NCBI GenBank assembly: GCA_023334545.1
Contig: JAADVB010000157.1
Coordinates: 1-44,527 of the forward strand
DNA length: 44,527 nucleotides
DNA from: Salisapilia sapeloensis CBS 127946
Lineage: Eukaryota; Protista; Oomycota
Reading direction: 5' to 3'
Shown one piece after another: positions 1-44,527 of this stretch. The position numbers and the translations under genes were made by a program. Each line of letters starts with the position of its first letter. Position 1 is the stretch's first letter. The notes beneath the pieces were generated by a model. The model was not told the DNA's origin. It made no database searches and saw nothing but the letters and a program-made list of their open reading frames with translations.

Positions 1-1
1 A

Positions 2-556
2 GAGAAGCCGGATAAAGTCATGATGTACTGCACTGGAGGTATCCGGTGTGAAAAAGTTGGTGCCTACGTCCGTCAGCATAAGCAGATCGACAATGTCCAG
101 AAGCTGAAAGGAGGTATCGTCAGCTACGCCAACTATGTCAATGAGCAGGAAAGCAAGCCTCGATCTCTCTTCCGAGGCAAGAACTTCGTCTTTGACCAGC
201 GCTGCGTCACTCGGACACCTTCCACCAGCGGCGAAGAAGTCGATGCGAACCAAGTCACAGATGACGTCCTGGGCAAGTGTTTCCAATGTGGAGCGCCTTG
301 CAACCAACACACTAACTGCAGCAACTTGATGTGTCATGGCCTTGTCCTGCAATGCAGCGTATGCGCCGAGTCTTATTTAGGCGCTTGTAGTCAAGCATGC
401 AAAGGCGAAGTTATCAAGATGCAAGATATGGACGAAGAGGAACGTCGAGCCTACCGAAAAACAAACGCACATCTTTGGCACAAAAACAACCCAAACAGCG
501 ATCACAAGTATAATCGCTTTCGACCTCTACCTCCAGACGTAGCTGCTACAGCCTAA
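2..556 (+). CDS. TrhO/YceA (UPF0176, TSTD2-like) rhodanese-domain protein, C-terminal part, truncated at the 5' window edge
   Basis: The frame is open from base 2 (EKPDKVMMYCTGGIRCEK). It carries the CTGGIRCEK active-site loop, LKGGIVSY, FRGKNFVFDQR and the Cys-rich C-terminal region CFQC..C..H.NC.N..CH...LQC..C, all typical of the YceA/TrhO family. Stop TAA at 554-556. Confidence 0.9.
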   Translation, partial: EKPDKVMMYCTGGIRCEKVGAYVRQHKQIDNVQKLKGGIVSYANYVNEQESKPRSLFRGKNFVFDQRCVTRTPSTSGEEVDANQVTDDVLGKCFQCGAPCNQHTNCSNLMCHGLVLQCSVCAESYLGACSQACKGEVIKMQDMDEEERRAYRKTNAHLWHKNNPNSDHKYNRFRPLPPDVAATA

Positions 557-707
557 GTAGTACCTTTTTAAATACATAAAAAACGTCTTTCTTCATTTCT
601 ATCGAAAGTTGGAATACAAATGGAAATGGAAATTAAGTAGGTGGCATTTGATGGTTTACCACGATCCATGACATTCAGGACATCACGTCGTTTCAGCCCT
701 GCAAGCC

Positions 708-1602
708 ATGTCGGATAGAGAGCAGTCGACTTCCCCTACGAATATGGATGTGGATCGAGACCAATCGGCGTCTCCACGTCCGGCAAAGGATGAGAACTCT
801 CGCTCTCGTTCAAACTCGCCTGAACCGGAACGCCGGGAGTCGACGGGAGAACCAAAGGATAATCCGGGCAATAACCTCTACGTGGCGAGCCTCCCGACTC
901 GAGTACTACTCTACTGCATACCAATCCTTCCATGAGGATAGTGTTGATAGTACTGTAGCATGTATATTAACTTTGTGGATCTGTAGGCAAAGCAGTCAGA
1001 CTTGGAGGAATTGTTTTCAAAGTACGGACGACTGGAGAAATGCCAAGTGATCCAGGACCCAGTGACACGAGAATCGAGGGGCTTTGGCTTTGTCACGTTT
1101 GAAGATACGCGAGATGCCGAGGATGCCGTCAAGGAACTCAACGGGTACTGCTTTCCAACTCTCGCCATGAGCCAGCAATCTTCCATTTTCCCATCACTGA
1201 CCAATTCGATCCGCGACTTCGACCTGCCATAGTGCCGAGGTGCTGGGCCGGCGCATCCGAGTGGAACATGCCAAGCGTAAGAATGGACACCCCAAGACAC
1301 CAGGACAATGTACTTTTACCATATTCATACGGCATATGCATGCAGCTAACGACATATATAAACTAGATCTAGGACCCAAGCAAGCGAGCTCCAGGTATGG
1401 TGGCAACCGCAATCGACGTCGTAGTCGTAGTAAGGATCGTGGCCGTCGTGGCCGCAGCCGTAGTGGAGACAGAAGCCGTACACGTGATCGCTCGCGCAGT
1501 CGAGACAAGCATAACGATGACCGTCGCAAAAATGATCGTCGTAATGATGATCGAGGACGAGAACGCCGCGATCGTGATCGTGACAGTGGCCGCCGTCGTT
1601 AA
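708..1602 (+). CDS. Transformer-2-like RRM/RS splicing factor, 4 exons
   Basis: Inferred exons 708-902, 987-1144, 1233-1309, 1367-1602 (all GT-AG; GCTAAC branch point near 1345). The spliced protein has RNP2 NLYVASL, RNP1 RGFGFVTF, the TRA2-type linker KTPGQYLG and an RS/RD-rich C-terminus. Confidence 0.85.
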
Positions 1603-1696
1603 CAATAGTGCTGGATTGAGTTGCGACTGCATTGCTTTGAATTCATCCGTTCTTTTCTACCCAAAGTTTACTTGATAAAGCATCTCGCTCTTCTCT

Positions 1697-3907: not shown

Positions 3908-4090
3908 GTGAATTCTGACCTTGAGGATGTGTCACCAATACAAATTTCAAGTCATTCGCAAGAACCGAACGCGACACGAAACAGCACGAGCATCCTTATC
4001 CATACCCATCGACACGTAGTTTTCGATTAACACTTGCATCCAGACGAATTATATACTCTAGATAAACAAGTAAAAAGGAGCTTTACCACC

Positions 4091-7000
4091 ATGTTGCAAC
4101 GAGCGGTGGCAGTGCTTCTACAGAGGCTACTGGGAAAGGTCGTGTTGATCGATCCGTCCATGCTCCGGTTGTCACTATGGCAAGGAGACCTGTCGTTTAC
4201 AGATCTACAGCTCCGATTATCACATGGAGAAGGAAGCATCGGTCAGTTGGACGTGCAGATACCGTGGCGAGCGCTATGGACCCAGCCTGTGATCGTCCGA
4301 GCGGACCACGTAAGCGTCTTATTGCACCGCGCAGCGCCAGAGCCGATGGATCCTGCAGAGATGGAACAGGTCTTAAAGGCAGCTGTGAGTGATTTAAGTG
4401 GAGAATTTGCGCAGGAACAGGAGGATGCGACATATAAAGATGATAGCACGTACCTCTCTCGCTTGGTCACGCATATCTTGTCGAATATCCAAGTTGAAAT
4501 TAATACTATCCAGGTCCGGTACGACTGTGTCGAAGGTGTCGCTACAGAGGTAGATTATCTTATCAAGTCCATGCCGTATAAAGTATAGCTAACGCAAGAC
4601 AATGATAGAAGTGCAGCAGTGCGACGCTCGAGGTTGGATGCGTTTCCATGCTAAATGTCGACTCGAATTGGGAAATGACGTACACGCCTTATTCAAGCCC
4701 AGGAGCATACTCGCAGAAACTTATTAAAGTCGAAGACATTGCAGCGTATATTGAGTACAAAGAAAAAACAAAGGATGGCGTATTAGGCCACAAACGACGC
4801 GACTATCTCTTCCACGAGTGGTTCATTCGTGTCAAGGCAGTCCTTCATTACGACAGCGCAAATGCTAGCTTTCCGGACGTTGATTTAGATGTCGAAGTCG
4901 GCTGCAATCCAGGTGAGATCCAAGAAAATTGTCAGACATGCGCTAGTTCTCCTATCTACCATACCAACTCGACGGCTTCATCCAATACCTTGCGTGTACA
5001 TGACAGTCAGCCCCGTATACACTTTGAAGCACAACATATCGACATTCTGTACGAGATGTTGATGGAGGTCAAAGCACCTTACGATCAGTTTGAAAGACTT
5101 TCAGAGCTTTCTCAGAAAAAGATGTCACGACCGGAAGGCTTCGTTATGGTACTAACTTATGCCAAGCAATGGCTCATGGCGGATATCGACGCTGTATCGG
5201 GCGAGAAAACGGTCATTGACGATGACGAGGATGACGACGAGGATGAATTCGAAGACGCCATTACACCTCCCACACTAGTCATGAAAGCAACATTTGTCCA
5301 AGGTGCAAGCCTTGTGTTCTCTTCACGACAAGAAGATGGTGCCATACAAGAGAAGAGATCTAGGATGTGGCTATGGGAACTCGGACGGACAAGTGGTAGC
5401 CTTAAACAGTCGTGTGTCGATGACGAGATTTCATTCCAGGTCGACTCTTTAGACATTTATGAAGCTGCTGCAAATGGAGATAAGATGTATACGCTCTTCC
5501 ATCATGAAGCACGAAAGGAGCAATATGTAGACTCTCCTCTACTCCAATTTTCATGCGTCTTACCGGCGTATGAAAGTCGTCTTGTGGGTCATCAGCCTGA
5601 AATGGACTTGCAGCTACCTCATTTCATGATTCTTATGCTTGAAGATGAGACCATTACAGAGTGGATGAGTTTATTCGCTCCCTTGTATCAGTGGTGGAAA
5701 CAATGGACGAAAGCTCGTCCGAGTAAATCGATTTTGTCTGTAGAAGAACAGCCGATTGCTCCGATATCGAATGTTCATGTGCGTGTCGATGGCATTCGAG
5801 CTCTATTCTCTACGCATAAGAACTTTGGCTTTGGCGTCGAAGTATCCCAATTAAACGTGGTAACAGATACGGCAGATGCGTCCCAAGTGCAGTTGCAGAT
5901 CATGTCTCGATCCTTCTCAGTATTCTCTGCACCGAGTCTACTTGAGAACTACAGCAATAAGGAAACTAGCATGAAACAAGTGTCTAATCTACATCGGATC
6001 GTTGACATTGACAACTGGAAGCTCCGACTCAAAAGTTCATCGAGAACAAATTGGCATCCAGAAGTCTACACTTGTCGACATAACTTATACTCGAGCGATT
6101 CTATCCACGAATCGAAAGCGATATTCGATTTAAATCTCGGTGATGAAACGCCAATGTACACGTACGACTTGGATCTCCCTCCACTTATCGTGCATATGCA
6201 GTGGGAAGAAGTCGAGGCCTTAGCATGGACCGTTGGAAAGTGGAGCTTCTTTATGCCAGACCCAGTAGATGTTCCACCAACTGCTAATAAACACCGCTTT
6301 AGTCGGCATAAAAATGGCGTCTGCCAAAAACGATGGAACGTCAGTGTGCCACAGCTTGAATTCAAAGTCGGAGGTGATGATGCCAAGTCATTTATTGTGC
6401 TCAAAGCGCAGTCGCTTTCGTATCGTTCAAAAGCTTGCTCCACGAATCAGCTACACCAAATAGCAGCGTCGACAATCTCTTTGGAAGATGAGAAGACGTC
6501 AATCCTATCTGTCGTTCAGCATTCTCGCATGTCTCGCAATGCTTTAGACGTTCGACATCTTGTACGCGAAAGAGATACAAGTGACGTCGAAAAGAGCGGT
6601 ATGACAGGACCTGTCATGCAGAGTCACGTGTTTATGGAGCAACTAGCAGGAACATTTTCGCTACCAAGTGTCCAGAGCCTTCTCTCAAATTACCAGCGGT
6701 CATATGAGAGCTTTAGCCTTGGACTCGTGTATGCTGCTGGCGCTGGGTACGACCGAAGTGCTTTTGCATCGAATATCGATCGTATCCAATTGAATCGAGA
6801 CAAATGGGCGCAGCAAAAGGCGAGGGAGAGTAACTTTGAGCACATTATCGATCTAACCATTGCTCAAGACTGCCAGATCACGATTGTATCTCGTCAGGAG
6901 TCGCCACCTGCAATGGAAGTAGACACTGACGAGGAAAATGTAGCGATTGGAAGCATCGACTGCAGTAACATGTCCGCACATATCCGCTTACTCGTTCAAG

Positions 7001-10000
7001 ACGGTGTGCCTAGTATCGAAGCAAAGGGCTCCATGCCGAACTTTCAGATCACGGATTTGGCCTTACCTGTCGCTCATCAACGATCGGATACATTCGTCAA
7101 GTCACATCCACGCTTTGTGGGTTCGCACCAGGACATGCACTTAGGTGATCTGGACATTACGTCCATCGGTGTGAAGAACACAGTCGACTTTGCTGTGATG
7201 ACAGGTGTGTTTGCGAACACAGATTCAGCGACATCTGCTCCATGTTTGATGCAAGTGCGTCTAGATGCTGTCTGTATCATGTACCTCCACCGTATCTGCA
7301 AGCAGTACGTTCGTTTCGTTGCAGATCACGTCGTTCCGTCTTTAGAAAATGCATTTACCTACACACCGAACGACAAGGATGCAACGTTAGTGTTTGAACG
7401 CTTTGGATCTCCATCTAGGCTTCCTAGTAACATCCAGGAAATTATTCGTGTGATCTCCAAGCTATTCCCAGTAGCAGACGCAGAGGATGTGGAAGATGTG
7501 ATGCCAAAGCTTCCTCCACTCGCATTGGAACTCTTTGCCAATGAACTAACGTTTGCATTGCCACAGAATTCATTTTCAAAGGATAGCATCGTTCTCCACT
7601 GCACCAATGCACGCATGTGGAGTGCTGGGATAGACCCAGATGACTCGTTCTTCCTCCAGTCTGGCATGCTAAACACGAATGAAGGTCGTCTGTCGCACAG
7701 CAGTACGCTCTCAGATGCGACGCACACGCGGGCTCAACAGTCGAGACGCATGACGTTACGGAATCTACGACGGTCCGTGAAGAACCATCGGTCTCGCATC
7801 CTTAGTAGTCGCAGTCAACTCTATGTGGACTTGAAAAATGCGACGCAGCAGGCGCAAAACTACTTGCATGAAGGGTTTGAGGCGTTGCCGGAAGCAGAAG
7901 AGGCCGTTAGTATTATTCGCGGCAAGATCAAGTCGCTTGATGAACACCTTGAGAGCTTAGAAAAGAACTTGCATGAGCTTGATGATGCCATTGAGGACAC
8001 GAGGGTAGAGCACGAAGCGTTCGCAAGGTCTCGACGAGAAAGCTCTGGGCCGTATTCACCTAATGGCAGCTTTGTTAGTACCACGGGGGACGTAGATGAT
8101 GATCTTGTCACTAAGATTCAAGCTGCTTTGAAAGACATGCCACAGCATATTATTGCAGGCCCGTTGTTTGCAGCAGACGATGCAGAGTTCCATGACGCAC
8201 GTGCGGTGATGGAGACGAATATGTTTTCAGCTGAAGAGTCCACATCGCCTATCCTGTCGCTGTTTGAATTTGAGATTGTGGATATTAGTGGCATCACGAC
8301 GAACGCATCTAGTCCACTCTTCCATCATGCTCTGTTAACAGGTCGACTGGATTTTGAAGCGGAGGAATTGGCAAATGATATCCAAAGCGCTTTCCTCGGC
8401 ATTCACCTTGGATTGAATGAACTTAGTGTCGGTGCAACGCAAGATCAGTATGCTGTTTTTGTCGGTATGATATTTGAAAACTTTAGAGAAGCATCTTCCG
8501 TCGTGAACGAAGACACTTTCCCTTTGTGTGACAACTGCGGCGGGCATCACTTTCCTACGGAAGCTTGTACATCTATCTGGATGCATATACCGATCAAAGT
8601 TGCAGACGCCGCGCTACGTATCTCCAACGGGGATCATGCGATTGCTGATTTGTTCTTGGAGCAACTGGAGCTGAGCTTTACGCTCCGTACAGACGACTCA
8701 TTAGAGCTTGAGGCATCGGCTTTATCTGCTGTCGTCGTCGATATTAGTCCTTCCAAGTCCCCTGTAGCATCAGAACTTTTGCGTCCATTAGCTGGAGAAG
8801 GACTCCAGGTCGAGTACAAGCAGTGGATGAACTGGACTGATAGCGCTTTCGCGATCAAGTTGAATCACACTAACATGATTGTCATCTTTCCGACACTCAC
8901 CGAGATCATGGAGTACTTTACGGTGCCAGTGTTAAGCGACACTTTCATCGATTTTGGCGAAGGCTTTATGATGCCTCCACCTCCAGACTGGGCCAAGCTC
9001 GAGCTCCAGTTCGATGCTTCGAGCTGTCTACTCTCGTTACTAGAAAACTTTGGCTCTGGAGATTCAAGAGCGTTGGTGATCCTTGCAAACTATGCACTCA
9101 CTTTTTCTACCACGAATGCAAGTGAAAACGGTCTGGACTTGAAAAAGCTACACTTTATGTTCGACCAACGAGGCGTCTACTTTTCACAGTTGCCGCATCT
9201 ACAAATCGACGCGTTGTTCCCGCTTTGCAATGCCTTTTCACTCACGATGGACCACTTCCTAGAAGGTATGTCGTCTCTCCATCGTCGAAATTCGTTCGCT
9301 CTTGCTCCCGTGGAAGCACGCTTTTCAGTCCAAGATGCACACTTGTTTATTAACATTGTGAACAACTACATCAAGTGGCTACCTGATGCTGTAGCAGCTA
9401 CGCAGCCTCCTCCGTCATCTAAGCAAGAGCAGGTCGCTACACGGCCTGCCAATACTCTGTATACAGTAGACAAGCTGCTTGGTGATGTTGGCGAGTTCCG
9501 ACTCGTGCTAGTAAACAACAGTCTTGGTATTCCCATCGCGGACTTTCGTCTTGACGATATCTTGTGTGAATACGTCCAGGACGATGCTTACTCAACGGAG
9601 ATCGGAGGTGTCCTGTCTTTCAACTATTTCAACAATAGCATCTACAGATGGGAGCCACTCATTGAACCATTCTTTGTCCACTTGCGTGCACTACGGTCAC
9701 ACGAAGAGAATGCTCATGTGGAGATTCTAGCCGACTTGCCAAACACGGTGAATGTAAACGTGACACCAGCAATGGCACCTCTGATGTCGTCTGAAGCATT
9801 GAAACGAGCGGATTTCTTAACGACTGGATCTAAGTCGTCTGCACCGTTCTGGATTGAGAATCGAACAGGGATGGAAATCAAGTTTAGTTTCCGAAGAGGA
9901 AGAGGGAGTTTGATTCAACAGCGTATTGAGGACGAAGACCGTGTCCCAGTGGATTGTCGAGAACAAGGTGATATGCGGAGCTTTGATAGTGATTCGGCAG

Positions 10001-19478: not shown

Positions 19479-19522
19479 TCAAAACAACTTCTTTGTGAGC
19501 AAACAAGCTTATTCTTTTAAAC

Positions 19523-21801: not shown

Positions 21802-21906
21802 GGTACGCGTCGCTCTGTCCAGATTCTTGTCGGTCCAGAAAGAATGCTCTCTTCGACTTTATATAGTGAGACAATCTGATTACACCAAGTAGCAAATCAA
21901 GTGTCA

Positions 21907-27819: not shown

Positions 27820-27834
27820 CTTGCGTCCTATGTG

Positions 27835-27852
27835 GTAAATGGAGAAATGAAG
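27835..27852 (-). promoter_or_regulatory. Oomycete-type initiator + flanking promoter region (Inr-FPR) motif upstream of the Kir gene
   Basis: The minus strand reads CTTCATTTCTCCATTTAC, matching the TCATTYBNNNWTTY core known from oomycete promoters, about 16 nt upstream of the ATG at 27819. The motif is short, so a chance match is possible. Confidence 0.45.
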
Positions 27853-27985
27853 ATGTCTCGATCCAACCGAACAAGATAGAAGATAGTTCAAAATTTATCA
27901 TCTGGCACTCTATATCGGAAAAATTCATCCAAAGTTTCCGTTTCGGTGGTCGAAATCATCTATTTCCCCTAGATTACCACGTCGC

Positions 27986-28885
27986 CTAGGGCCAAAGCGC
28001 TCGACGGGTCTTGGCAACGACGGGAACAACGTACCCTGTGATACCTAACGTAACGGGATAGAAGGAGGAGGAGAAGACAACTGCAGCAGCCCAGGTGCCT
28101 AAAGCGGATCCGATCTCTTCGACGCCGATTTTGGCTAGAATCGGATTTAAATCCACGCCTTGTGTGATGAGAAAGTAGAGACCAGAGACAACGGTGACGC
28201 CTGCGAGGCGAGAGCCCATCATATACGCGGCTCCGTATCGGTCAATGACATCTCGAACGAGGTTTAAGCCACGGCCGAATAGACTAGTTTCGGATGATTT
28301 AGGTGGATTCGGAGGTTGAGAGAATCTACATAAAGTAGGAAGTAAGCATCATATCGATCTGTAATTGGAAAATGAAAACTGTACGAGGGGATGGCGCCTG
28401 TGAGCTCCGATAGACGGACTTGTTGGAATGCTGGGAAGACTTTCGCGACTCCTGCTGCAAACGCAATGTCCATGGGTAGTCGGAATCGACGAAAGGGACG
28501 ACTGGCAGCGAATGCCAAAGCGAATTCAGGTGAAAACTCCACGCCTAATGCCAGCATGAGTTTATAATCGACAAAGGGTACTTCTAGAGTAATAAAGTAT
28601 ACCTGAAAGCGTGATGAGTCCATACATGGCACCCACACCGACCATATCGGATGCAAAGAGCACTCCTAGCGTTTCTCCTGGATGCCGACGAATCGCAGTG
28701 TTCATCCGATGCACCACCGCATCCAAAAAGGGCTTTTCGCTTGCATCAGATTTATCACTACTCTCGTTCTCCGGTGGTGGACCCGCGGTACTCATTGCCT
28801 GCACCCATGTGCGGCTGCCTCCAGCATGTCGAAGTATCGATGCACTCGCAAACGAGCGCGGTCGAAGAGTGCTCACGGCCAGCAT
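27986..28885 (-). CDS. FAM210/DUF1279-like membrane protein with a probable mitochondrial presequence, 3 exons
   Basis: Inferred exons 28885-28603, 28544-28385, 28325-27986, which join in frame. The N-terminus is Arg/Ser-rich with no acidic residues. The C-terminal DRYGAAY...LYFLITQGVDL..IL...YP...T..VVPVVAK pattern resembles DUF1279. Confidence 0.6.
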
Positions 28886-29071
28886 CCTTCTGGTCGATTC
28901 AATGACTCAGAAGAGGGTGGACGCCTAAATCTACCCTTCACTTAGCGTCACAAATGATAGTAACAATCCTCCCTGATAAACGTACCCTTTACGCACTTCA
29001 AGTAGAACAGATTACACTTGTCTAGAGTATGCATCATCGCATCAGTTCTTAATTTGCTCATCTCAAGCGCA

Positions 29072-35000: not shown

Positions 35001-37156
35001 AACTCTTTGCGTGTATTGATGCTGGTGCACTGAAGCAAGATAAATTGAAAGAGACAAAGTCTGCGAGTACATTCGGATCCTACCTTGCAATGAACTCGAC
35101 GATCGTAAGCGAAGCGTCGACGCAGTACTCAAGAGTACAAGAGATTGATGTTGATGATATACCTACGGATATCGATTCCATTGGTTTCCCAGATACGGTG
35201 TCCGCCGTTGAAGAGGAAGAAGTCGGATTGGATCTACCTGACAAGCCACATGCTGGCTGGCAAGTTCCTGAAGAAGATATGCGGACCGTCCATCGTGTCA
35301 CGTGCTTACATGCTCTTGAAGTGATGGTAGACGTCGCACCTATTTTAGTAGAGGAAGCTGTCGCCAAGGACAAGAGTGCTTTAAAAATGCTATTCCGAGT
35401 CCTCTTCCCGCCTGGCCATGAAGTCCACAAGTCGGACGAGACAGAGGACGGACTCGCTCTGCCGGAAGATCTGTATGAAGACGGACGATTGCATTGTCTA
35501 CATGCGATCGAAGGCTTATCTGTGTTTGGACGTTTTGCACAAGAAGCTTGTACCATCGGTGTTTGTGACATCCTGATTGAACTCACCCATCTCTGCCGTG
35601 AAGTTGGTGTCGAAGCTCTTGGGATCATTAGAAACTTGTGTGAAAGCAACGCTAGACAACGAGCTGTCGAAGATATCATGCATTCTGGATGCTACATCGA
35701 GTTCCTCGCCATGCTCATTCTAGTAGGTGAATACATCACGGAGAAAGAGTTGGAAATTGCGACGAGCATGCGTCTCCCTGCTGCTCAAGTCCTGTCAGCA
35801 ATGTGCAAATTCGAGTCCGAGACACACTTGGAAGCGAGGCGTACCCTCTGCCGTTTCTTCCCGGTCGCCATGGTCTACCAACTAACGACGTACCCAGACT
35901 CGTTTGTCGAGTTCTATAGCACAGACCATAAGAACCCAGAACTCGTGTGGGACGAAGAGTTCCGTATATATCTACGTGAAAGCATCGGTCACTGCCTCGC
36001 CATGTATTACTCTTCTCCATCCATGGCAGACTCGTCTGCGGGAGATCCGATGCTGTCGGCCGTGTCGACCTTCCAAGTCGACTACACGCCGTTGTATCCG
36101 TACCCGATGGCTGGAGACGTATACTTGCTCCTCTTTTTAGACGATCCGACGTATCGTCTTCGAGATCCTCATTTCTTTGCTACTTGTCTATGGGAAGAGT
36201 TTGACTTTCTCTTCCGAGAACTATCCCACCTCTTGTCTACTTTACAAAAAGGTCCGGATATCGTCAGCAAAGAAGCTGCTGATCGAGACATAGAGCTACT
36301 GGACCTCGTCACGTCTTGTCTTGTCGTTGTGCTTCAAGTGTATCCGAATCTGTTGGATCGGATGGCAGATCTAAATGCGGCAAGTCAGTGCGTCCAGATG
36401 CTACAGGACACTTTCCGAGCTCCTGGTCGGGACCCTTGTCTCGTAAGTGCCATGCGTGTCTTGCGGATTCTATCACTGTCGAAGCCGTGCGTATCGACCA
36501 TGCAGAAAGACTTTCCAACGCTCATCACGTGTGTTCAGACACTCGTGAGTCCAGCGAGAGGTGGTCCGTTGCATTTCGAGGCAGCGTACTCGCTCGGCGT
36601 CTTGCGACGTGTCGTAAAGAACGCGACGAACCATGGTGAGCGAGATCCGAATGCAGGTATCGTCGCCCAGGCGTCTCAAAAAGAATTATTCCAGTTCCTA
36701 TTGCACATCCTTGAATCGAATGCTGCGTTGGGAGCAGTACGTGAACCTACCGTCGTACGCGCGATAGCCATCGACATCTTGTTGACGTTGGAGCGAGATA
36801 CGAATCAAGGTGCGATGGCACACCAGATCTTGAAAAAGAACAAACCGTGGCGAAAGCAGTTTCGACAAGAGTCCATCCGAGACGCAATTGGCAGAAGTGC
36901 CGAGGATCCTTTCTTGTGCGCCAAGTATCCACGAATGGATGCCGTAATTCGAGAACACTTGAGGAGAAACCCACCGAACATGCCTCCATCGCCTCCGACC
37001 AACCTTCGGGCGACAAGCACGTTGGATGAAAGACTGACGATGATGCAGAAATTCCGTAAGGCTGTTGCCATGACAAAGGACACGGAGAATGGCGAGTCAA
37101 CGTCTGGTCAGACTGCTCATCCTGTGCGTACAAGAGGATATGACGACAGGGTATAA
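29072..37156 (+). CDS. DNAJC13: RME-8/DNAJC13-like endosomal protein, intronless, with a degenerate J domain
   Basis: N-terminal KYMVVKHSWRGKYERIF..T.DP..FEVTNTW and EFNANVSPSGI. Four IWN-type repeats (LIWNESCREEL, VVWNQDMR, LYWNASMREEL, LVWDEEFR). A J-like segment lies at ~33617-33817. Confidence 0.92.
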   Translation: MAGRRSSFGSRQSLPLQPDKLSELHPSDSIFMSQQESPMRPPPASAPHASGSGRFRPTTPVEEYVSKYMVVKHSWRGKYERIFAVGPTRFSTIDPKDFEVTNTWALTALSNVQVDPESDDFFILSIKGPKKEEQLRLRCSYRAQLLSDLYNQQNTFARASTGFTSTHRSRYDVRKWSHRPEAASQDEAEHDSDRNEVRSPFIMEIASDALLLLTPEGVQRSRFPYISMDHLSAANDDDDAFILGLQGRDRVFFCHQRSQLLTKAQQAAKQLDLTLSSKRPTSLTQTMIQRKEYGKDVGSALCQFTVQKKAPSKQKEPLDRVLSIHEKYFVEHDMEDNVVSCLSYADIHVITFYPNRSEKFGIEFAGGRRKVYMSSKRDDILADLYDRCITGKENSDILIMPFTNVRGLRLLPFDAQEDTNASHEFFDDQSMSSFFLQRLHSIHRPGSGRNAEDKGFIDIAEEFNANVSPSGIPYNSSQSVVQDALRAIGPQLYYVSKTQPVSTRSACALLQTLYRIAPSFYGFQQIAQVAHMGDSISKLLVSKDPFVIFWTTLLLQRLFSHAPFASHKLDGHMQKQCLDAERRNKAALLGNTVLLEALVSNLKHIESKSMHSLIVMGVIMVLETTVGSSRDTTRATEAKSVVSSVVRCYKSLLTVLLESHCSTTVEACVLLLKATLEECDLDVANRMRDTVLDEGIALTYLYEAITHPSFDQRRVSRHLTALWMSHHDPSKQLLSRILPKAFLSFLDEPLLSTEEQEQMDEMEQRQVFSTNSSVQESRQASSLSSSVTSAQVNDVTGEHSAGPSSFDSSERVQSMTSSDHMRLQENKSFAGESISSSSRKLQKSVSALPPATSPPSLMPRASSAGAARRGVLSKESSARLVQRLQSSDRSIDATPAPASTHAMDSGRVKSRTSLDQSPRKRMNVSKIVQDAVDKMLPEKHSHSVTSIDKEMEKSTLERREAENFNLLFYMLSQDHYQVELIWNESCREELKKALATQVESIGRLQEKQGTNRIRWNHEDFRIDYDSLHDEVVVDGCYLDVLCALPNEHFEDVQEDKFIALSPDDVRMKFPEGVIRSLYQRLLRESIRAEYFNDIQLSHKCVRGMMIVAAAYAKDNGVSSMQFNDLDYLLQMITETKHNDLVASLTHLLRALCMSDINARNVLVHKKNVDIILQLLRMVHASSNVDVDGDDQGERVWIVTKADGESELMNVGEVKQLCASAWDVAAVPVQKAEVKCCEPCTDEWKVSECLQLRWQIMTQGTLDMTQVSHDAASLLLDVAHSTVRNTEMSPYPAPVALEALWSKARELVSLLAEHRTPELRHKVLKLLEFMYSSRWDFSLRDENADACISRKAMYKNGLFYLLFVGEEIDAETTAALLKATHLGQDGKEEDSALTAILPDAMISHLTTSSAETFAATFGGSVETPHVVWNQDMRRHVRDSCLAHMQDYMSCLTQDTTSHWQFVPMAPVRYPELDDDIWCNGVYLQQFCLSLETVIEDPIIFMHALTDLWEKETTRAPCPYDDLDIAADILDVSPRTASSSNDDNAAVVRDGFKRMARQVLLNHADELEYRIRMKELYAAYDRMTCPRPTLLSAGHDPTNLRLILQALVIMCKRYGTDLKSYVFPSYAALLSLLLTHCSAEGSPTVETTEQQRADISEHAAELLYLTCSVNQDNEQLLLEFPDVRSLEKVLNYCVDALVDGDGTSMHEHVSLHLLPTITGLLALQEGRKWAAQSPTLIVDMMRILWLWNHTSKQSLFLSKITQQVLEAMAYLSLSRVNQNVMCAKGAVWQLLLLFSEYNVEMDPRATEERVQEVNIPSEDFDEMRPEIQNYLAILAVKALCRITGVAEKSEVQPPRNLALKAALDALLTPNLANLLTVSDYHEYLKLYHGDCESYTLYWNASMREELLAYVRPRGDEQPSAEMEESLQDIVDFRFEYLGNVVTIGGLYLETLISSFEVIRDTREWVPPEELGIPNSFFTQLFACIDAGALKQDKLKETKSASTFGSYLAMNSTIVSEASTQYSRVQEIDVDDIPTDIDSIGFPDTVSAVEEEEVGLDLPDKPHAGWQVPEEDMRTVHRVTCLHALEVMVDVAPILVEEAVAKDKSALKMLFRVLFPPGHEVHKSDETEDGLALPEDLYEDGRLHCLHAIEGLSVFGRFAQEACTIGVCDILIELTHLCREVGVEALGIIRNLCESNARQRAVEDIMHSGCYIEFLAMLILVGEYITEKELEIATSMRLPAAQVLSAMCKFESETHLEARRTLCRFFPVAMVYQLTTYPDSFVEFYSTDHKNPELVWDEEFRIYLRESIGHCLAMYYSSPSMADSSAGDPMLSAVSTFQVDYTPLYPYPMAGDVYLLLFLDDPTYRLRDPHFFATCLWEEFDFLFRELSHLLSTLQKGPDIVSKEAADRDIELLDLVTSCLVVVLQVYPNLLDRMADLNAASQCVQMLQDTFRAPGRDPCLVSAMRVLRILSLSKPCVSTMQKDFPTLITCVQTLVSPARGGPLHFEAAYSLGVLRRVVKNATNHGERDPNAGIVAQASQKELFQFLLHILESNAALGAVREPTVVRAIAIDILLTLERDTNQGAMAHQILKKNKPWRKQFRQESIRDAIGRSAEDPFLCAKYPRMDAVIREHLRRNPPNMPPSPPTNLRATSTLDERLTMMQKFRKAVAMTKDTENGESTSGQTAHPVRTRGYDDRV

Positions 37157-37259
37157 GTCTTGGAAGTATATGAACTGATGGAAGGAGAATACATAAAGGA
37201 TTATCTTAGCTTTTTGATAAACGCGCGAATCGAACGAAAGAACTTGCGTATTCATTGAC

Positions 37260-38576
37260 TTAGATTGTTGTTTTCGGTTCTACTAATAGCTCGCGGTATT
37301 CCTGCTCAAGTGCTGTCCATGTATGCTTCTGGAAGCTTTGACAGACAGATTGAGCGTCTCGACGGGCTAAAGACGGTCGTAAGCAATAGCTTTTCAGTCT
37401 TTTAAAAAGCTGTCGCTCTGTGTTGTAGAGGCATTGCTTCGGATAAAGCTCTGGATAGACTAGTCGATTCGGAAGAAGAGGAAAACAGCCACATAGCGTT
37501 GCTTCTAGCATTGACACTCCGTAGAACTCATGAAGACTATTCGAGACAACGACGTCGGAATCGCGTAGTATCCGAAAGTACTCTTCTTTCGATGCTGCGT
37601 ATCCCCAATGGCAGATTTGTACTGACGCAAAGCCAGATAATGCTTCAAAAGCCTCTTTAAAGATTTTTGGTGACTCTGGATAGCTCTCACCAAGAACAAT
37701 GAGATCAATACGCTGCGGCAAGCTACTTGTTTGAGTGTCTGGATTACTTTTTTTAAGAAGGAATTGAGCTAGTTCCTCCACAACTCGAAAGAACTGTGTT
37801 GGATTCTTATCATGCTCCCATCGGTGATTCCAAACTATTCTCAACGGTTTGTCTGTAATATCTCTCGATTCGGCATTCCACGTCGAGCTATCAGGAGCTG
37901 GTAGGAAGATAGGAAAGTACAGAACTCTGCTTTTTGATCGAATCGTAGCCTCAATACTGCCTGATGGTCGAAGCTGCTGCTCTGGAATCTTATTCAAAAA
38001 TGGTTGTACGCTACGCAGGAAGCTTGTGCGATTAAAGTCCGAGTTGAAGACGATGGTATCTGCTACCATACACGACATGATTTGACTCCAGCCGATCTGG
38101 AAGTCTTGCGCTGCTACTTTTTGACCAGCGACTTCTTCTTGTAGTGGATACGTGAGCTGGTTTTCATGGAAATATAGGATCTTCTCCACTGTTGGCGAAG
38201 CGAGATGGGGCTGAAAGCCAACGAGCTCTGCAAGATTTACCATGGAGGTTGCGAAGAGCTTACGACGTGTGAATCCGGTGTCAAGTTTTATTTCTTGTGC
38301 GAAATGGAAAGATGAAGCCATGAAGCGCCAATGCCACTTTCGAGGAGGGAGTGTATGGAGTTGATACTGCACATTGCCTGCTTGAAGGATATTTGAAATG
38401 AGAATATCAATAAGCTGTTTGTGTGATCCGCCATAAAACGGTTCAATTAAAATAACTTCGAGGTTATCGGTGGCTTCTGGTTCATCCAGAAACTTAGATT
38501 CTTCCTCGTCGATCATAGTCAATTGCGAGTTAGGACACGCTTTGGTACTTGCTGCAGACTTTCGTGCTGATGGCAT
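37260..38576 (-). CDS. GTDC1-like (DUF3524 + GT-B) glycosyltransferase, homolog of tRNA-queuosine mannosyltransferase QTMAN
   Basis: LIEPFYGGSHKQLID, TLPPRKWHWR, LYFHENQLTYP, ADTIVFNSDFN, IVWNHRWEHDKNP and HEFYGVSMLEA..CGCFPLLP.RLVYPE. Confidence 0.88.
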   Translation of the reverse strand: MPSARKSAASTKACPNSQLTMIDEEESKFLDEPEATDNLEVILIEPFYGGSHKQLIDILISNILQAGNVQYQLHTLPPRKWHWRFMASSFHFAQEIKLDTGFTRRKLFATSMVNLAELVGFQPHLASPTVEKILYFHENQLTYPLQEEVAGQKVAAQDFQIGWSQIMSCMVADTIVFNSDFNRTSFLRSVQPFLNKIPEQQLRPSGSIEATIRSKSRVLYFPIFLPAPDSSTWNAESRDITDKPLRIVWNHRWEHDKNPTQFFRVVEELAQFLLKKSNPDTQTSSLPQRIDLIVLGESYPESPKIFKEAFEALSGFASVQICHWGYAASKEEYFRILRDSDVVVSNSLHEFYGVSMLEATLCGCFPLLPNRLVYPELYPKQCLYNTERQLFKRLKSYCLRPSLARRDAQSVCQSFQKHTWTALEQEYRELLVEPKTTI

Positions 38577-38961
38577 TTAAAATTACGCGGGAAAAGAGAA
38601 ACATCAAAGGTCGTACGAGTAGTTTTTCCATTCGTATATCAAAAGGTCATTTCCATTAATGGACTTACTGGTACAAGTCAAACGAGTACTAAAGAAACTA
38701 CTTTGAACAAAGTGAATTGATGAACTGGTGCAAAGCAGACTAAAGTCCTTCGACAACGAACTGTGGATATTAAAACGAGCTGAAGCATGTGGAAACTCCA
38801 GGTGCTTGAAGCAGTTTTCATTTCATCGAGCTCCGAAAGAGCGACTCAGTTCTATAACTTTTTTTTAATAGACCATGGCGTTGATGCCAAATTTAGCTTC
38901 TTTGGAATTCACATTGCGTTCAAATTGCCACGAATACATCGTCGTATCCGGTCAAGCAATT

Positions 38962-39655
38962 ATGAGTATCCCGCCGAAAATTCAGTGCTTTGCAGGATGT
39001 GGTAATGTCGGAGATCCAGACCTGAGCTTCTTTTGTGTTGACTGCCACGCGGATCGGGCTGAGTTGGAAGAGCAACGAGCTTTGCAGCGCTTCCTGGAAA
39101 CTAATACCAAAGAAAATCAAGCGAATAAACAATTAACGAAGATTTTGCGTCGTAGGGCACCTCCTGCTCTAGACCATCGCAAAGGTATCAACAAAAATAC
39201 AAAGCTCAGGAGTTGCTACAATGGCTAATTAGACATTGTGAAACCTTGTAGCTCTCTTTGACTTTCTAGAAAGACCTCGTGAACGGGATCCGTCCATCGT
39301 TGCGAGAGAGATACACTTCTTGGAGAGGGAACTTCAGATACGAGAGGCATGTAAACAGCAATTGCAACGCTACATGCTAGCAACTGACTATGAAGACGAA
39401 GAAAGAGATCGTCGAGAATGGCATCGATATTTGTATGGTGCGCCCCAACCGGTTCCAAGGAACGATATGGGAGAAGAAGCAGAGCTGAAGGCACAGAGAA
39501 TGCTTTACTGTTACTGGCAAAGGAGAGCATTAAACAAGCGCATTAAAGAACGAATTCGCATCCGAGAGGAACGTGAGAAGGAAGCAAAACAGACACATAA
39601 GCGAAAGCAGAAAGGAAAGACTTTAAAGAAAGTTTCAATCTCGTCGGCAATATAA
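38962..39655 (+). CDS. Uncharacterised protein with an N-terminal A20-type zinc finger and a charged helical C-terminus, 2 exons
   Basis: Exons 38962-39184 and 39252-39655 join in frame through intron 39185-39251 (GTATCA..CTAAT..TAG), merging two ORF-track entries. CFAGCGNVGDPDLSFFCVDC has C-x3-C-x11-C-x2-C spacing. Confidence 0.6.
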
Positions 39656-39709
39656 AACTAAAACCACTTATGAGCGCAATATATGTGTACTTATGCGATA
39701 TACTCGACA

Positions 39710-41032
39710 CTAGACATGCTGAGAGACTTCTTTCGTTTCGTCATCCTGTCGTGACATCTCTTGCTCCGCAGACTCCGCTTTCTGATCCGACTGACCGGTG
39801 CTCGTATCATCTGAATCAGTCTTACCAGAATTATATTTTTCTTTGTCCTTGCTGACACCAGCGTTCGTGGAAGGGTTTGCGGTAGTATCAACCTCCTTCT
39901 TATCATCAGCTACTTCAGTTTCTTTGTCGACAACTGTATCCTTAGTTGGTTCAGCAACTTCCTTCTTCGTACTTTGCTCATCTTCGTTACCGACATCAGC
40001 ATCCAACTTGCTATCTCCGTTTATGGTGAACTTCACATGCGTAAGCTCTTCGCTAAGTTCCCACAGCTTCTTCCCGGCAGATTCTGATGTACCCTTCCAG
40101 TCCGGATTCTCGAGCGTCGGGTATCCACGGATGTGCCATAAACCATCCGGGCCGTAGAATTCACCTCCTTGGACTGTATCCTCTGAAGCGGCATACAGAA
40201 TAGGTAGGGCTCCCATCTCTACACTCTGCTCCGGGTTTACATACTTAAAAACTTTCCAGAAAGCACGGACATGCCACGGGTTGTTACCCGATGGAGCTGA
40301 TAGTACGTTCGTTTTAGCGACACCAGGATGACCACTTAGGACCATGACGTTCTTGATACCGGCAGCTCGAAGACGATGATCAAGCTCTTTCATGAAAATC
40401 AAGCAACCAAGTTTACTGTCTTCATAGACGAACAAAGGAAAGTATTTCTCCTTGGGCTTCACTGGTCGATCTTCATTGTAGAAAAACGAGCATCGGTGCA
40501 TGCAGCTGCCGACGACTACGATGCGAGCAGCTTTACTTCTTCGAAGCATGTCAAAAAGTTGGCAGGTCAGTGCGAAATGACCAAAGTAGTTGGTAGCCCA
40601 TTGTCGGTCGATACCATCTTCTGTTAGGCTATGAGCAATCCCCATGACACCAGCGTTGTTCACGAGCAAGTCGAGGCGTTCGTACTTATCACGGAACTCG
40701 ACTACAAACTGCTTGACGCTGGCAAGGCTGCTAACGTCTAGCTGCATGAACGTAACGGATCCAATATTTAATTCCTCATCCTTATCAGATGAAGGTTGGG
40801 ATGATAGTTCTTCGTTTATCTCTTTTTCTGCCTTGAGGCCTCTTTCAGAGCTACGGCATGCCAGTATCACATGAGCACCTTTCAAAGCAAGCTTGAGCGA
40901 TACTTCGCGACCGAGTCCAGCATTCGCACCCGTCACAATGGTGATCTTCCCACGCATGGACTTCATATTGTCAATGTCCCATTGTTGTGGCTTTTGGTCT
41001 TCCGGAAGTTCACGGCAGCTCGCATTGCCCAT
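39710..41032 (-). CDS. Short-chain dehydrogenase/reductase (RDH11/12- or WWOX-like) with an acidic C-terminal extension
   Basis: TGANAGLG cofactor motif, LDLLVNNAGVM, NYFGHF, catalytic YEDSK, HPG and GEFYGPDG. Confidence 0.93.
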   Translation of the reverse strand: MGNASCRELPEDQKPQQWDIDNMKSMRGKITIVTGANAGLGREVSLKLALKGAHVILACRSSERGLKAEKEINEELSSQPSSDKDEELNIGSVTFMQLDVSSLASVKQFVVEFRDKYERLDLLVNNAGVMGIAHSLTEDGIDRQWATNYFGHFALTCQLFDMLRRSKAARIVVVGSCMHRCSFFYNEDRPVKPKEKYFPLFVYEDSKLGCLIFMKELDHRLRAAGIKNVMVLSGHPGVAKTNVLSAPSGNNPWHVRAFWKVFKYVNPEQSVEMGALPILYAASEDTVQGGEFYGPDGLWHIRGYPTLENPDWKGTSESAGKKLWELSEELTHVKFTINGDSKLDADVGNEDEQSTKKEVAEPTKDTVVDKETEVADDKKEVDTTANPSTNAGVSKDKEKYNSGKTDSDDTSTGQSDQKAESAEQEMSRQDDETKEVSQHV

Positions 41033-41833: not shown

Positions 41834-42574
41834 ATCTTGATATTGAATGTAGTCAATGACTGCCTATTTCATCCTGCTGCGATCGGCTCGATTCTTAGGC
41901 ATTTGCATTCACGATGACGCCAAAGTCAACTACAGACCTTCAGTTTTTTCACATAACTGGAAATCCACGCGCCATCCAAGTATTTCATTGCTCCCATAAG
42001 CCGCATGGCACATCTACCACAAGATATCTTCAACTAATTGCACTACAACTGGTGCAATCATCTCTATATGATACTTGTGTCGGTGCTTCAAGTGTCAACA
42101 AGATACTTTGTGTCGAAAATGTCAAACTTGATGCAGCATAAACCAGGAAATGAGACTCATCCCAGACCCCATTTCTTACTTGGATATCCATTTCAGTCAC
42201 TAGCATAATGCCAACCTTCTATTTAATTACACAAGCGATCTGGTGCACCAAAAAATCTCCTTTTCTAAAGCATTCCTTATCCGGTCTCAGGTTCATCTAT
42301 CCTCTCAGCTAATGAACCTTCAACAAGATCATTTTCACCTATTAAAAGCCATCCATCCTCCCTATAGAACTAGAAACCGAAGGAACGCATGGCGTACATC
42401 TATGTATTATGTATGCGTTATGACGAAAGGGCTTCCTTCTATTATATCCCTAATGGCAAACCGCAGGAATGCCAAACGTTCCTATGCCGGTTGGAATGCA
42501 GGGATGAACAAGATGTCATCCATAATGCAAATGTCGACGTCATCCGAGCCGTCTATACAGGCTAGCCAAAACCT

Positions 42575-44023
42575 TTAATCAAAGAAACGATGCCGTTTAT
42601 TGCGCCTTGATGTCAGCAGCGTATTTAAATCCGGCTTCTTGCTCTGTTCCTGTCGCTTTCGGTCTTCATACCTTCTTCTCGTCTCCAACGTTTTCACCGG
42701 ATCATGATGCAGCACGTCAAACCCAAAGCTCGAAGGGCCATCGCGTCCAGCCAAGTGTTCATCCGGCGGCAAGACGGCAGCTAGTATACTCCCAGACTGT
42801 GTCTCCTTCACCTGTCCTCTCCGTCGGATCTCAACATCCAGTATCCTTCGCGCAAACTCAAACGCTCGGACGATCGTCCGAATGTCATAAGAGTTCGTAC
42901 CAATGTCATGCGTCGTATCCATCGGGTTCTCCAGACTCAATAGATATGGTCGACTATAGTCCATCCAGCCACGATCATTCTTATGATAGTAGCTCCCTCC
43001 ATTCCGAACACAAATGCCAATGTCCTTATAGTTAAAGTCACGACCGTACAAGGTGAAGAAACCAACGAGGAGTATCCCGAGATTATTATACCGAACGTCC
43101 GTGTGACTCTTTCCCAAGTCTCTCCGATACTGCTGGAGGAAACTAATGATCATCATCTGCAGCATAAAGCTACCAATACCTCCAGTATAAGTCTCATTTA
43201 CTCCTCTCTGAGCCAAAAAGTATTTGAGCACAAGCGTCAGAGGGCGAAAGGAAGGATAGAGACGCATATAGTGCTTCACCAAGTCTGCCGTAGCCAAACC
43301 ACCACTGACGTTAAACGAGACATCGACTGGGAAACCAGTCGCTTTGTGCACAAACTTCACGATTGGGATGCGAGCTTTATCGATGACTTCCATGAAGCTT
43401 ACGAGATCTCGTTCCCGTAGTTTCTCTGCTAAAGCAAACAATGGCTTCGTACCGGACGGTGCATCTAACACAACTAAATCGACGTCGCTCTGTGGGAGGA
43501 ACATTTGTGTCTCGTGACTGCCGAATGTCTCGAGTGTCGCATCCGGCCACAAGGCCTTGACAATAGTCGACATTTCATCCACGAGCTCCTGTCTCTGTTT
43601 CATCTCGGCATCAGATGGACTCATGAACTGGACAAAGTCTAAAATTTCATCATGCAATGCCAAGTACAGATTAGCATGATTGTAACTCGATTTGTCCACG
43701 GCTTGCATCCATGGTGCAGGCTCACTCATGGCAAGTTGATGCGTTTCCTGTGAACTCTTACGGTTGGAGTCTACATCCGCTTCGTCTGTATTCATATCGA
43801 GCGTAATAAACCCATCTTCGACACGAGGTTCACTCGCCACTTCTTGCTTGGACTTCTCTTTGGCTTGTTTTTTCTCGAATTTCGCCTTCGATTTCGCTTT
43901 TACGGACTTTTTCTCAGCTTTCGTCTTCTTCTTACCACCATTGTTACTGTTTTCAGGTGTTACGACACGTCCTTTGCCCTTGAGCTTGCCATCTCGACGT
44001 GCTGCCGCTTTCGTCCGAGCCAT
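42575..44023 (-). CDS. Non-canonical poly(A) polymerase, TENT4/PAPD5/Trf4-like, intronless
   Basis: LHDEILDFVQFMSP, catalytic TFGSHETQMFLPQSDVDLV, KARIPIVKF, VDVSFN, TYTGGIGSF and LSLENPMDTTHDIG, with a basic N-terminus. Confidence 0.93.
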   Translation of the reverse strand: MARTKAAARRDGKLKGKGRVVTPENSNNGGKKKTKAEKKSVKAKSKAKFEKKQAKEKSKQEVASEPRVEDGFITLDMNTDEADVDSNRKSSQETHQLAMSEPAPWMQAVDKSSYNHANLYLALHDEILDFVQFMSPSDAEMKQRQELVDEMSTIVKALWPDATLETFGSHETQMFLPQSDVDLVVLDAPSGTKPLFALAEKLRERDLVSFMEVIDKARIPIVKFVHKATGFPVDVSFNVSGGLATADLVKHYMRLYPSFRPLTLVLKYFLAQRGVNETYTGGIGSFMLQMMIISFLQQYRRDLGKSHTDVRYNNLGILLVGFFTLYGRDFNYKDIGICVRNGGSYYHKNDRGWMDYSRPYLLSLENPMDTTHDIGTNSYDIRTIVRAFEFARRILDVEIRRRGQVKETQSGSILAAVLPPDEHLAGRDGPSSFGFDVLHHDPVKTLETRRRYEDRKRQEQSKKPDLNTLLTSRRNKRHRFFD

Positions 44024-44144
44024 TAATTCCTTTTCTTCGGTATGGTGACTTTATATTCGTCATTTATTTCGCTCGAAGCTACAGTTGGTATGAGGTTTAA
44101 ATAAATGACGGAATAAAAAACGAAGATAAACACGTGAGACCGAC

Positions 44145-44527
44145 ATGAAATTGTGGACCTCGTGGAGACGACGAGCGAGTACTATAAGAACGATGCAGCC
44201 TTGTTATTGGCAATACTTGAGCGCATACAAGTATGTAAAGATAGATAAGACGACCTTACCTTCTCTACGTCGACAAATTCAAGCTACATGGGATAAGATT
44301 GGCGTCTTGGGCAGGATTTATATTTCGACGGAAGGCATTAATGCTCAATTGATGCTGCCGGAGGCGAATGTAGACGCGTTGGCTGTCTCATTTCCAGAGT
44401 TATTGTCCAAGGAAATTATGGTGTTTGGACAACGGATTGAAATGGGAGCAGCAGACACTTTGGATGGACAGCAAATGGACCATGAACCAAACAATGACAA
44501 GAAGGAAGCGCCGTTTACGAAATTGGA
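44145..44527 (+). CDS. TrhO/YceA rhodanese-family protein, N-terminal part, truncated at the 3' window edge and absent from the ORF track
   Basis: From ATG 44145 the frame stays open to the end: MKLWTSWRRRASTIR...YLSAYKYVKI...IGVLGRIYISTEGINAQLMLP...APFTKL. GRIYISTEGINAQ matches the YceA/TrhO N-terminal domain motif. Confidence 0.85.
   Translation, partial: MKLWTSWRRRASTIRTMQPCYWQYLSAYKYVKIDKTTLPSLRRQIQATWDKIGVLGRIYISTEGINAQLMLPEANVDALAVSFPELLSKEIMVFGQRIEMGAADTLDGQQMDHEPNNDKKEAPFTKL

What the first reader, a model, noticed from the sequence alone, without database searches (positions are those of the whole stretch)
1..44527. Both window ends carry complementary halves of a TrhO/YceA gene in permuted order: circular or tandemly repeated ~44.8 kb unit?
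Seen: bases 2-556 (+) encode the C-terminal half (from KVMMYCTGGIRCEK) and bases 44145-44527 (+) the N-terminal half (to PFTKL) of the same family, with no overlap between them. Joining end to start is in frame (GA+A gives Glu, reading FTKL-E-EKPDKVMMYC). Known: intact TrhO proteins have roughly 90-100 aa between these points, including the D-x-R-N-x-x-E and G-H-F first half of the rhodanese domain, and this is missing here. Inference: the region is either a circle (eccDNA or amplicon) or a collapsed tandem ~44.8 kb segmental repeat broken inside trhO, or two trhO paralogs flank the region as direct repeats. The in-frame join has a 1-in-3 chance probability. An amplicon of ordinary housekeeping genes in an oomycete-like genome would be unusual.
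Basis: partly seen in the sequence, partly recalled or inferred. Interest (0 to 1): 0.75.

Follow-up and report, generated by a model that had tools for sequence, protein, structure and literature searches.

The report
Contig broken inside duplicated TrhO gene
The two gene halves at the ends of this piece of DNA are an ordinary assembly break: the organism has two copies of a tRNA-modifying gene with an almost identical middle, and the assembler stopped there, so this is no evidence for a DNA circle.

Summary
Bases 2-556 encode a TrhO C-terminal half and bases 44145-44527 an N-terminal half. The ends do not overlap, and about 94 residues are missing between them.

The window is a whole contig, C431. 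Two other contigs stop at exactly the same bases. C113 ends with the same last 220 nt (2 SNPs), and C523 starts with the same first 324 nt (3 SNPs). Outside these stretches the copies are only about 35-50% identical as proteins.

At each terminus exactly 141 nt are identical. Three unrelated contig termini of this assembly also share exactly 141 nt with other termini.

The repeat is a gene-conversion tract between a short TrhO and a TrhO fused to a TrmR-like O-methyltransferase. Nine other oomycetes have the same pair with the same homogenised core, and several of their assemblies break there too.

The most likely order is C113 - core - C431 - core - C523. A circle or a tandem amplification is not excluded by sequence alone but nothing supports it. 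The finding is ordinary and of low interest.

The parts
2..556 (+). C-terminal half of the short-type TrhO paralogue. It runs from the active-site loop CTGGIRCEK through the Rhodanese_C zinc-finger region to the stop at 554-556. The 5' part of the gene is cut off by the contig start.
   Evidence: The post-core sequence (LMCHGLVLQC...KYNRFRP) falls outside the Peronosporales/Pythiales fusion-type clade, in the group that holds the short-type proteins and the Saprolegniales fusions.
1..324 (+). 3' part of the near-identical (gene-conversion) tract shared with C523:1-324. There are 3 mismatches, at 142, 220 and 313. Divergence is abrupt from base 325.
1..141 (+). Terminal 141-mer identical to C523:1-141. 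This is the outgoing junction node of the collapsed repeat.
   Evidence: The same 141-nt overlap occurs at unrelated contig termini.
44145..44527 (+). N-terminal half of a TrhO paralogue (UPF0176_N domain), with ATG at 44145. It is cut off by the contig end after ...PFTKL plus GA.
44308..44527 (+). 5' part of the near-identical tract shared with the last 220 nt of C113. There are 2 mismatches, at 44386 and 44330. Divergence is abrupt upstream.
44387..44527 (+). Terminal 141-mer identical to the last 141 nt of C113. This is the incoming junction node of the collapsed repeat.
42575..44023 (-). PAPD5/Trf4-like non-canonical poly(A) polymerase, transcribed divergently from the TrhO N-half 120 bp away. 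Its orthologues sit next to the short TrhO in other oomycetes.
4034..41032 (.). Ordinary nuclear genes between the two TrhO pieces. They include a VPS13-like giant ORF, an Rpb3/AC40-like RNA polymerase subunit, an inward-rectifier K+ channel, a QTMAN-like glycosyltransferase and a short-chain dehydrogenase.
   Evidence: The polymerase subunit and, just outside this range at 42575-44023, the poly(A) polymerase are each single copy in the assembly.

Best explanation
The window is a complete contig (a unitig of a k=141 de Bruijn assembly) lying between two direct copies of a repeat that the assembler collapsed. The repeat is the catalytic core of two paralogous TrhO (tRNA U34 hydroxylase) genes. 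One is a short form. The other is fused to a TrmR/YrrM-like O-methyltransferase. Gene conversion keeps about 820 nt of the two genes roughly 99% identical: 220 nt plus about 279 missing nt plus 324 nt. Their flanks are only 35-50% identical at protein level. Four unitigs therefore meet at one collapsed node. C113 and C431 enter it, and C431 and C523 leave it. The most likely chromosome order is C113 - core - C431 - core - C523, with the two TrhO genes 44.8 kb apart in the same orientation. Shown here: the four coincident ends, the 141-nt signature, the two paralogue types, and the concerted evolution of the core in other oomycetes. Inferred: that the path is the linear one, and that the missing node was lost through a length or binning filter.
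For: The window is G000:C431:1-44527, a whole contig. C523:1-357 matches the window start and the C113 end matches the window end. All four termini stop at the same base. The first mismatch is at nt 142 from the terminus on both sides, and identity collapses at nt 325 and nt 221. C113 start, C523 end and C564 start each share exactly 141 nt at 100% with termini of other contigs. k-max 141 is a widely used MEGAHIT setting. No contig of G000 carries the missing middle. The C523 copy continues into a PF01596 O-methyltransferase. Oomycetes generally have both a 590-700 aa fusion and a 420-450 aa short form with neighbouring locus tags. Within nine species the core is 89-100% identical between the two paralogues (97-100% in eight). 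The same paralogue type is 70-88% identical between species, and the flanks are 39-72% identical within species. The core tree groups by species and the post-core tree by type. Phytophthora lilii, P. fragariaefolia and P. megakarya assemblies also break inside this core. The window's genes are ordinary single-copy nuclear genes.
Against: Sequence alone cannot tell the linear path from 'C113-core-C523 plus a closed C431-core loop', because both use every edge of the graph. No read depth or read pairs were available. The N-terminal unique parts (34 alignable columns) could not be assigned to the short or fusion type, so the pairing of halves is not proven. Gene order around the pair differs from Peronosporales and Pythiales whichever path is right. 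There the order is SMC2 ... fusion - short - PAP, and the two genes appear to be head to head. The assembler's identity and the reason the 561-nt node is missing are inferred.
Confidence: 0.8

Rival explanations
1. Tandem amplification. The chromosome carries C113 - core - (C431 - core) repeated two or more times - C523, produced by unequal crossing-over between the two direct cores. The 44.8 kb unit is collapsed to one contig.
For: The graph topology allows any copy number. Direct repeats of about 820 nt at roughly 99% identity are good substrates for unequal recombination.
Against: Nothing indicates extra copies. The contig was binned together with its single-copy neighbours. No depth data were available. 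This model still requires the linear flanks found here.
Confidence: 0.07
2. Free circle. C431 plus one core copy is a 44.8 kb extrachromosomal circle carrying an intact short TrhO. The chromosome reads C113 - core - C523 and carries the fusion gene.
For: The window start carries a short-type C-half. The poly(A) polymerase beside the N-half at the window end is the conserved neighbour of the short paralogue in other oomycetes. The weak similarity trend of the N-termini points the same way.
Against: In Phytophthora the polymerase lies 3' of the short gene, not 5' as here, so the synteny argument does not transfer. The similarity trend rests on 34 columns and is inconsistent between targets. The unit carries single-copy housekeeping genes such as an RNA polymerase subunit and a VPS13-like gene, and no recognisable replication or segregation functions. 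The contig ends are generic k=141 branch points.
Confidence: 0.05
3. Mixed-source artefact. The four ends come from two related strains or species in one bin, or further partner contigs are missing, so neither simple path is right.
For: The core node itself is missing.
Against: The flanks differ in the way ancient paralogues do (short versus fusion type), not as alleles or orthologues. Both types are expected in one oomycete genome. No other copy of either terminus exists in the file.
Confidence: 0.05

Closest known systems
Collapsed-repeat contig break in a de Bruijn graph assembly (2-in/2-out repeat node, e.g. MEGAHIT k-max 141)
   Same: Four contig termini stop at the same bases. Each shares exactly k=141 nt with a partner. 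The repeat node is missing. Unrelated contig ends of the same assembly behave identically.
   Different: Nothing differs in kind. The repeat here is a gene-conversion tract inside a coding gene rather than a transposon or rDNA.
TrhO (YceA) oxygen-dependent tRNA U34 hydroxylase and its fusion with TrmR in Phytophthora (Sakai et al. 2019, PMC6599085)
   Same: The domain order is UPF0176_N - rhodanese with CTGGIRCEK - Rhodanese_C. The C523 copy continues into a PF01596 O-methyltransferase, as in the P. sojae and P. ramorum fusion cited in that paper.
   Different: The genes here are seen only as halves because the rhodanese first half is not in the assembly. The paper does not describe the second, unfused paralogue or the homogenised core.
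Concerted evolution of neighbouring paralogues by gene conversion
   Same: There is a sharp switch from about 99% to under 50% identity at both tract borders. The core groups by species and the flanks by paralogue type in nine oomycetes.
   Different: In Phytophthora the two genes appear to lie head to head and close together. In this genome the cores are direct repeats, about 44.8 kb apart if the linear path is right.
Extrachromosomal circular DNA or amplicon
   Same: Complementary halves of one gene family sit at the two ends of a contig in permuted order.
   Different: The ends do not overlap. Each end has another partner contig. The content is single-copy housekeeping genes.

Membership tests
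TrhO / UPF0176 (tRNA uridine(34) hydroxylase) | N-terminal acylphosphatase-like UPF0176_N domain | tested here: met
   Window 44145-44527 matches PF17773 at 3.3e-14 and NF001133 positions 3-55.
TrhO / UPF0176 (tRNA uridine(34) hydroxylase) | Rhodanese domain with the active-site loop CxGGxR (CTGGIR) | tested here: inconclusive
   The loop CTGGIRCEK is present at window 29-55. The first half of the rhodanese domain is not in the assembly.
TrhO / UPF0176 (tRNA uridine(34) hydroxylase) | Rhodanese_C cysteine-rich C-terminal domain | tested here: met
   PF12368 at 1e-19 for the window copy and 6.7e-18 for the C523 copy.
TrhO / UPF0176 (tRNA uridine(34) hydroxylase) | Whole-protein score over the NCBIfam cut-off (170 bits) | tested here: not met
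   The halves score 79 and 33 bits because each is a fragment.
Collapsed repeat node of a de Bruijn assembly | At least two contigs enter and at least two leave, all ending at the same base with a shared terminal k-mer | tested here: met
   C113 and C431 enter, C431 and C523 leave, with 141 identical nt at each terminus.
Collapsed repeat node of a de Bruijn assembly | The same k-mer overlap occurs at unrelated contig ends of the assembly | tested here: met
   All 3 termini tested share exactly 141 nt at 100% with other termini.
Collapsed repeat node of a de Bruijn assembly | Repeat node has about twice the depth of its flanks | not testable with these tools
   No reads or depth were available.
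Circular DNA / eccDNA amplicon | The contig closes on itself, shown by overlapping ends or junction-spanning reads | tested here: not met
   There is no overlap between the ends. About 279 nt are missing, and each end has a competing partner. Reads are not available.
Circular DNA / eccDNA amplicon | Raised copy number or exonuclease resistance | not testable with these tools
   This needs read depth or bench work.
Gene conversion between paralogues (concerted evolution) | A tract of near identity with abrupt borders inside otherwise diverged paralogues | tested here: met
   There are 5 mismatches in the 544 nt visible, then under 50% amino-acid identity beyond the borders.
Gene conversion between paralogues (concerted evolution) | The tract groups by species while the flanks group by paralogue type | tested here: met
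   In all 9 species the fusion and short copies are sisters in the core tree. The post-core tree separates the types.

The most novel reading that the evidence does not exclude
Recombination between the two direct TrhO cores has really excised or amplified the intervening 44.8 kb. This oomycete-like organism would then carry a circle or tandem array of ordinary housekeeping genes whose junction rebuilds an intact short TrhO gene.
Probability: 0.08. Interest if true: 0.6.

Novelty: not a real feature. Interest (0 to 1): 0.12.

Why it matters
The main value is as a caution for the scan. In a k-mer graph assembly, a contig that carries complementary gene halves at its two ends is what any sequence lying between two copies of a repeat longer than k looks like. 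A quick check is to ask whether other contigs share the terminal k-mer. That check settles most such cases without reads.

There is also a modest biological by-product. Oomycetes keep the catalytic core of their two TrhO genes (short, and fused to the next enzyme of the 5-methoxyuridine pathway) nearly identical by gene conversion, while the N- and C-terminal parts diverge. This systematically breaks short-read assemblies at this locus.

Tried and rejected
- **Exact-match scan of metagenome contigs** with the last 32 nt of the window, to find a spanning contig or the missing node: 0 hits.
- **Protein-guided scan of metagenome contigs** with the C523 fusion C-half: no relatives confirmed.
I could not fetch public contigs that span the gene or show gene order in relatives.
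- **Assigning the two N-halves to short or fusion type** from the 34 alignable unique columns was inconclusive. Mean BLOSUM62 scores were 78 versus 75 for the window-end N-half and 69 versus 78 for the C113 N-half, and they were inconsistent between targets.
- **Synteny of the poly(A) polymerase.** At first this seemed to say that the window-end N-half belongs to the short gene, which would close the contig on itself. I rejected it as a discriminator once the truncated Phytophthora gene models and consecutive accessions showed that the polymerase lies 3' of the short gene there, not 5' as here.
- **Synteny of SMC2.** It lies 4-20 genes from the fusion gene in other oomycetes, but directly upstream of a TrhO N-half here. 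The region has therefore been rearranged under either path, and this does not decide between them.
- **Relics of a second TrhO or methyltransferase** inside the window: none found. There are no tRNAs and no internal repeats of 60 nt or more.
Full report
**Observation**

The window is the whole contig C431 (44,527 bp) of a 22.4 Mb assembly in 1,365 contigs. Bases 2-556(+) translate to EKPDKVMMYCTGGIRCEK... followed by a stop. This matches Pfam Rhodanese_C (1e-19) and positions 164-226 of the NCBIfam TrhO model NF001133.

Bases 44145-44527(+) translate to MKLW...PFTKL. This matches UPF0176_N and TrhO positions 3-55. The contig ends with GA and starts with A. The window has no internal repeat of 60 nt or more, so the two ends do not overlap.

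In 18 oomycete orthologues, 82-129 residues (most often 94) lie between the equivalents of PFTKL and EKPDKV.

**What the ends really are**

Searching the organism's own genome with each end found a second partner for both.
- The first 324 nt of the window match the first 324 nt of contig C523 (123.6 kb). There are three mismatches, at 142, 220 and 313, and identity collapses from base 325.
- The last 220 nt of the window match the last 220 nt of contig C113 (147.6 kb). There are two mismatches, at 142 and 198 nt from the end, and identity collapses further upstream.

All four termini stop at the same base, and on both sides exactly 141 nt are identical before the first mismatch.

I then tested three unrelated termini: C113 start, C523 end and C564 start. 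Each shares exactly 141 nt at 100% identity with the terminus of another contig. The assembly therefore consists of de Bruijn unitigs with k=141, a common MEGAHIT maximum k. A contig end in this assembly simply marks a branch point of the graph.

Two unitigs (C113, C431) enter one repeat node and two (C431, C523) leave it. Neither the TrhO family model nor a full-length oomycete orthologue finds the missing middle anywhere in the genome, apart from a distinct third paralogue on C564. The node should be about 141+279+141 = 561 nt long. Presumably it fell under a length or binning filter; that is an inference.

The in-frame join has no meaning. The contig ends are set by the nearest SNP plus 141 nt. 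In many orthologues the terminal GA would fit an Asp/Glu codon (KL-D-IRIR) and the initial A the third base of a Gly codon.

**Why there is a repeat**

The four pieces belong to two old paralogues.
- The C523 copy continues for 404 residues into a PF01596 O-methyltransferase of the YrrM/TrmR type.
- The window-start copy ends after 184 residues.

Other oomycetes (Phytophthora, Pythium, Globisporangium) have both a 590-700 aa fusion and a 420-450 aa short form, usually with consecutive locus tags. Among the 120 best hits listed, Saprolegniales and Albugo show only the fusion.

Sakai et al. 2019 already noted the TrhO-TrmR fusion in P. sojae and P. ramorum and used it as a clue to TrhO function (PMC6599085).

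After the tract border, the window-start copy carries the short-type signature (LMCHGL...KYxxFRP) and the C523 copy the fusion-type signature (MCGxL...PNAL).

The core between the borders is homogenised.
- In this genome there are only 5 mismatches in the 544 visible nt, against 35-49% amino-acid identity outside the tract.
- In nine other species the two paralogues are 89-100% identical in the core from EKPxxV to ...NCSN, and 97-100% in eight of them. The same paralogue type is only 70-88% identical between species. The flanks are 39-72% identical within a species.
- A tree of the core pairs the fusion and short copy of every species. A tree of the post-core region separates the two types.

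This is concerted evolution by gene conversion. The 3' border lies in roughly the same place, near ...HTNCSN, in most lineages.

The same tract breaks other short-read assemblies. In P. lilii, P. fragariaefolia and P. megakarya the gene models start inside the core, at or near contig ends.

**Which path through the graph?**

If the node occurs twice, two paths use every edge.
- Linear: C113 - core - C431 - core - C523.
- Split: C113 - core - C523, plus C431 closed on itself through the core. With more copies of C431 this becomes a tandem array.

I tried to decide between them by orthology and synteny.
- The unique N-terminal parts offer only 34 alignable columns and give no consistent assignment.
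- The poly(A) polymerase that lies 120 bp from the window-end N-half is the conserved neighbour of the short paralogue elsewhere. The order is fusion - short - PAP in Pythium oligandrum, P. insidiosum, Phytophthora oleae, Bremia and Peronosclerospora. For a while this seemed to favour closure of the contig on itself.
- However, truncated models and consecutive accessions show that in Phytophthora the polymerase lies 3' of the short gene: GMF24772/24773 in P. lilii and GMF52263/52264 in P. fragariaefolia. SMC2 lies on the 3' side of the fusion gene. The two genes are therefore head to head there.
- In this genome the polymerase is 5' of a TrhO N-half, and SMC2 lies directly upstream of the other N-half. 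The locus has been rearranged under either path, and synteny does not discriminate.

What remains is parsimony.
- A contig attached at both ends to one repeat is the normal appearance of DNA between two direct repeat copies.
- The window carries ordinary nuclear genes: VPS13-like, Rpb3/AC40-like, a K+ channel, QTMAN-like, SDR and PAPD5-like. The Rpb3/AC40-like and PAPD5-like genes, the two I checked, are each single copy in the assembly.
- Nothing in the window resembles a replication or segregation function.

I put the linear path at about 0.8, tandem amplification at about 0.07, a free circle at about 0.05, and a mixed-source or incomplete graph at about 0.05.

**Comparison with what is known, and novelty**

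The genes are members of the TrhO family as far as the fragments allow. The N domain, the active-site loop and the C domain are present.

The fusion with the methyltransferase is already published. I did not see the lineage-wide homogenisation of the core between the two paralogues described in the one TrhO paper I read. It is a modest by-product and was only partly followed up.

**Limits**

- Both metagenome scans found nothing.
- The large representative-protein search, structure prediction and fold searches were not needed and were not used.
- No reads, depth or assembly graph were available, and these are what would settle the path.
- Earlier notes of this scan call the genome an oomycete or water mould. 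The best protein matches here agree with that: all are oomycete, at 50-60% identity.

Noticed in passing
L005 (G000:C523) 2-1216 (+): This TrhO copy is fused at its C-terminus to a TrmR/YrrM-like O-methyltransferase (PF01596, 2.5e-47). That joins two consecutive steps of 5-methoxyuridine synthesis in one protein. The fusion is conserved across oomycetes and was already noted for Phytophthora by Sakai et al. 2019.
   Followed up: partly
Alignment of P0001-P0100 with window 1-556 and 44145-44527: In nine oomycete species the rhodanese core of the short and the fused TrhO paralogues is 89-100% identical within a species (97-100% in eight) but 70-88% between species. The 3' border lies in roughly the same place in most species, near ...HTNCSN. 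This is long-lasting concerted evolution that I have not seen described.
   Followed up: partly
P0003 and P0079 (Phytophthora cactorum gene models): The 669-aa fusion model has the short-type N-terminus, and the 388-aa short model has the fusion-type N-terminus. This is either a flip of the segment between the inverted cores or a misassembly across them.
   Followed up: no
G000:C564:10892-11608 (-) (L007): A third, complete TrhO gene (365-aa open frame, 243 bits against NF001133) is only 36% identical to the oomycete short type. It is a separate, more bacterial-like paralogue.
   Followed up: no
window 557-4033: About 3.5 kb between the short TrhO stop and the VPS13-like gene has no ORF over 130 aa on the + strand and only one of 183 aa on the - strand (no Pfam hit). 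There is no tRNA and no relic of TrhO or the methyltransferase.
   Followed up: partly
window 37260-38576 (-): A clear QTMAN_N domain protein (tRNA-queuosine mannosyltransferase type, 1.3e-54) lies on the same contig as the TrhO pieces. Its function in an oomycete is untested.
   Followed up: no
G000:C523:123326-123625 (L020 301-600): The 3' end of C523 is a dispersed repeat with at least 40 copies at 73-88% identity across the assembly. It is probably a transposable element and explains that contig end.
   Followed up: no
window 4648-18003 (+) and 29018-37156 (+): Two uninterrupted giant ORFs of 4451 aa and 2712 aa. The ORF just upstream of the first (4034-4588) has a VPS13-like N-terminus, so the two probably form one gene. 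The second was not scanned.
   Followed up: no
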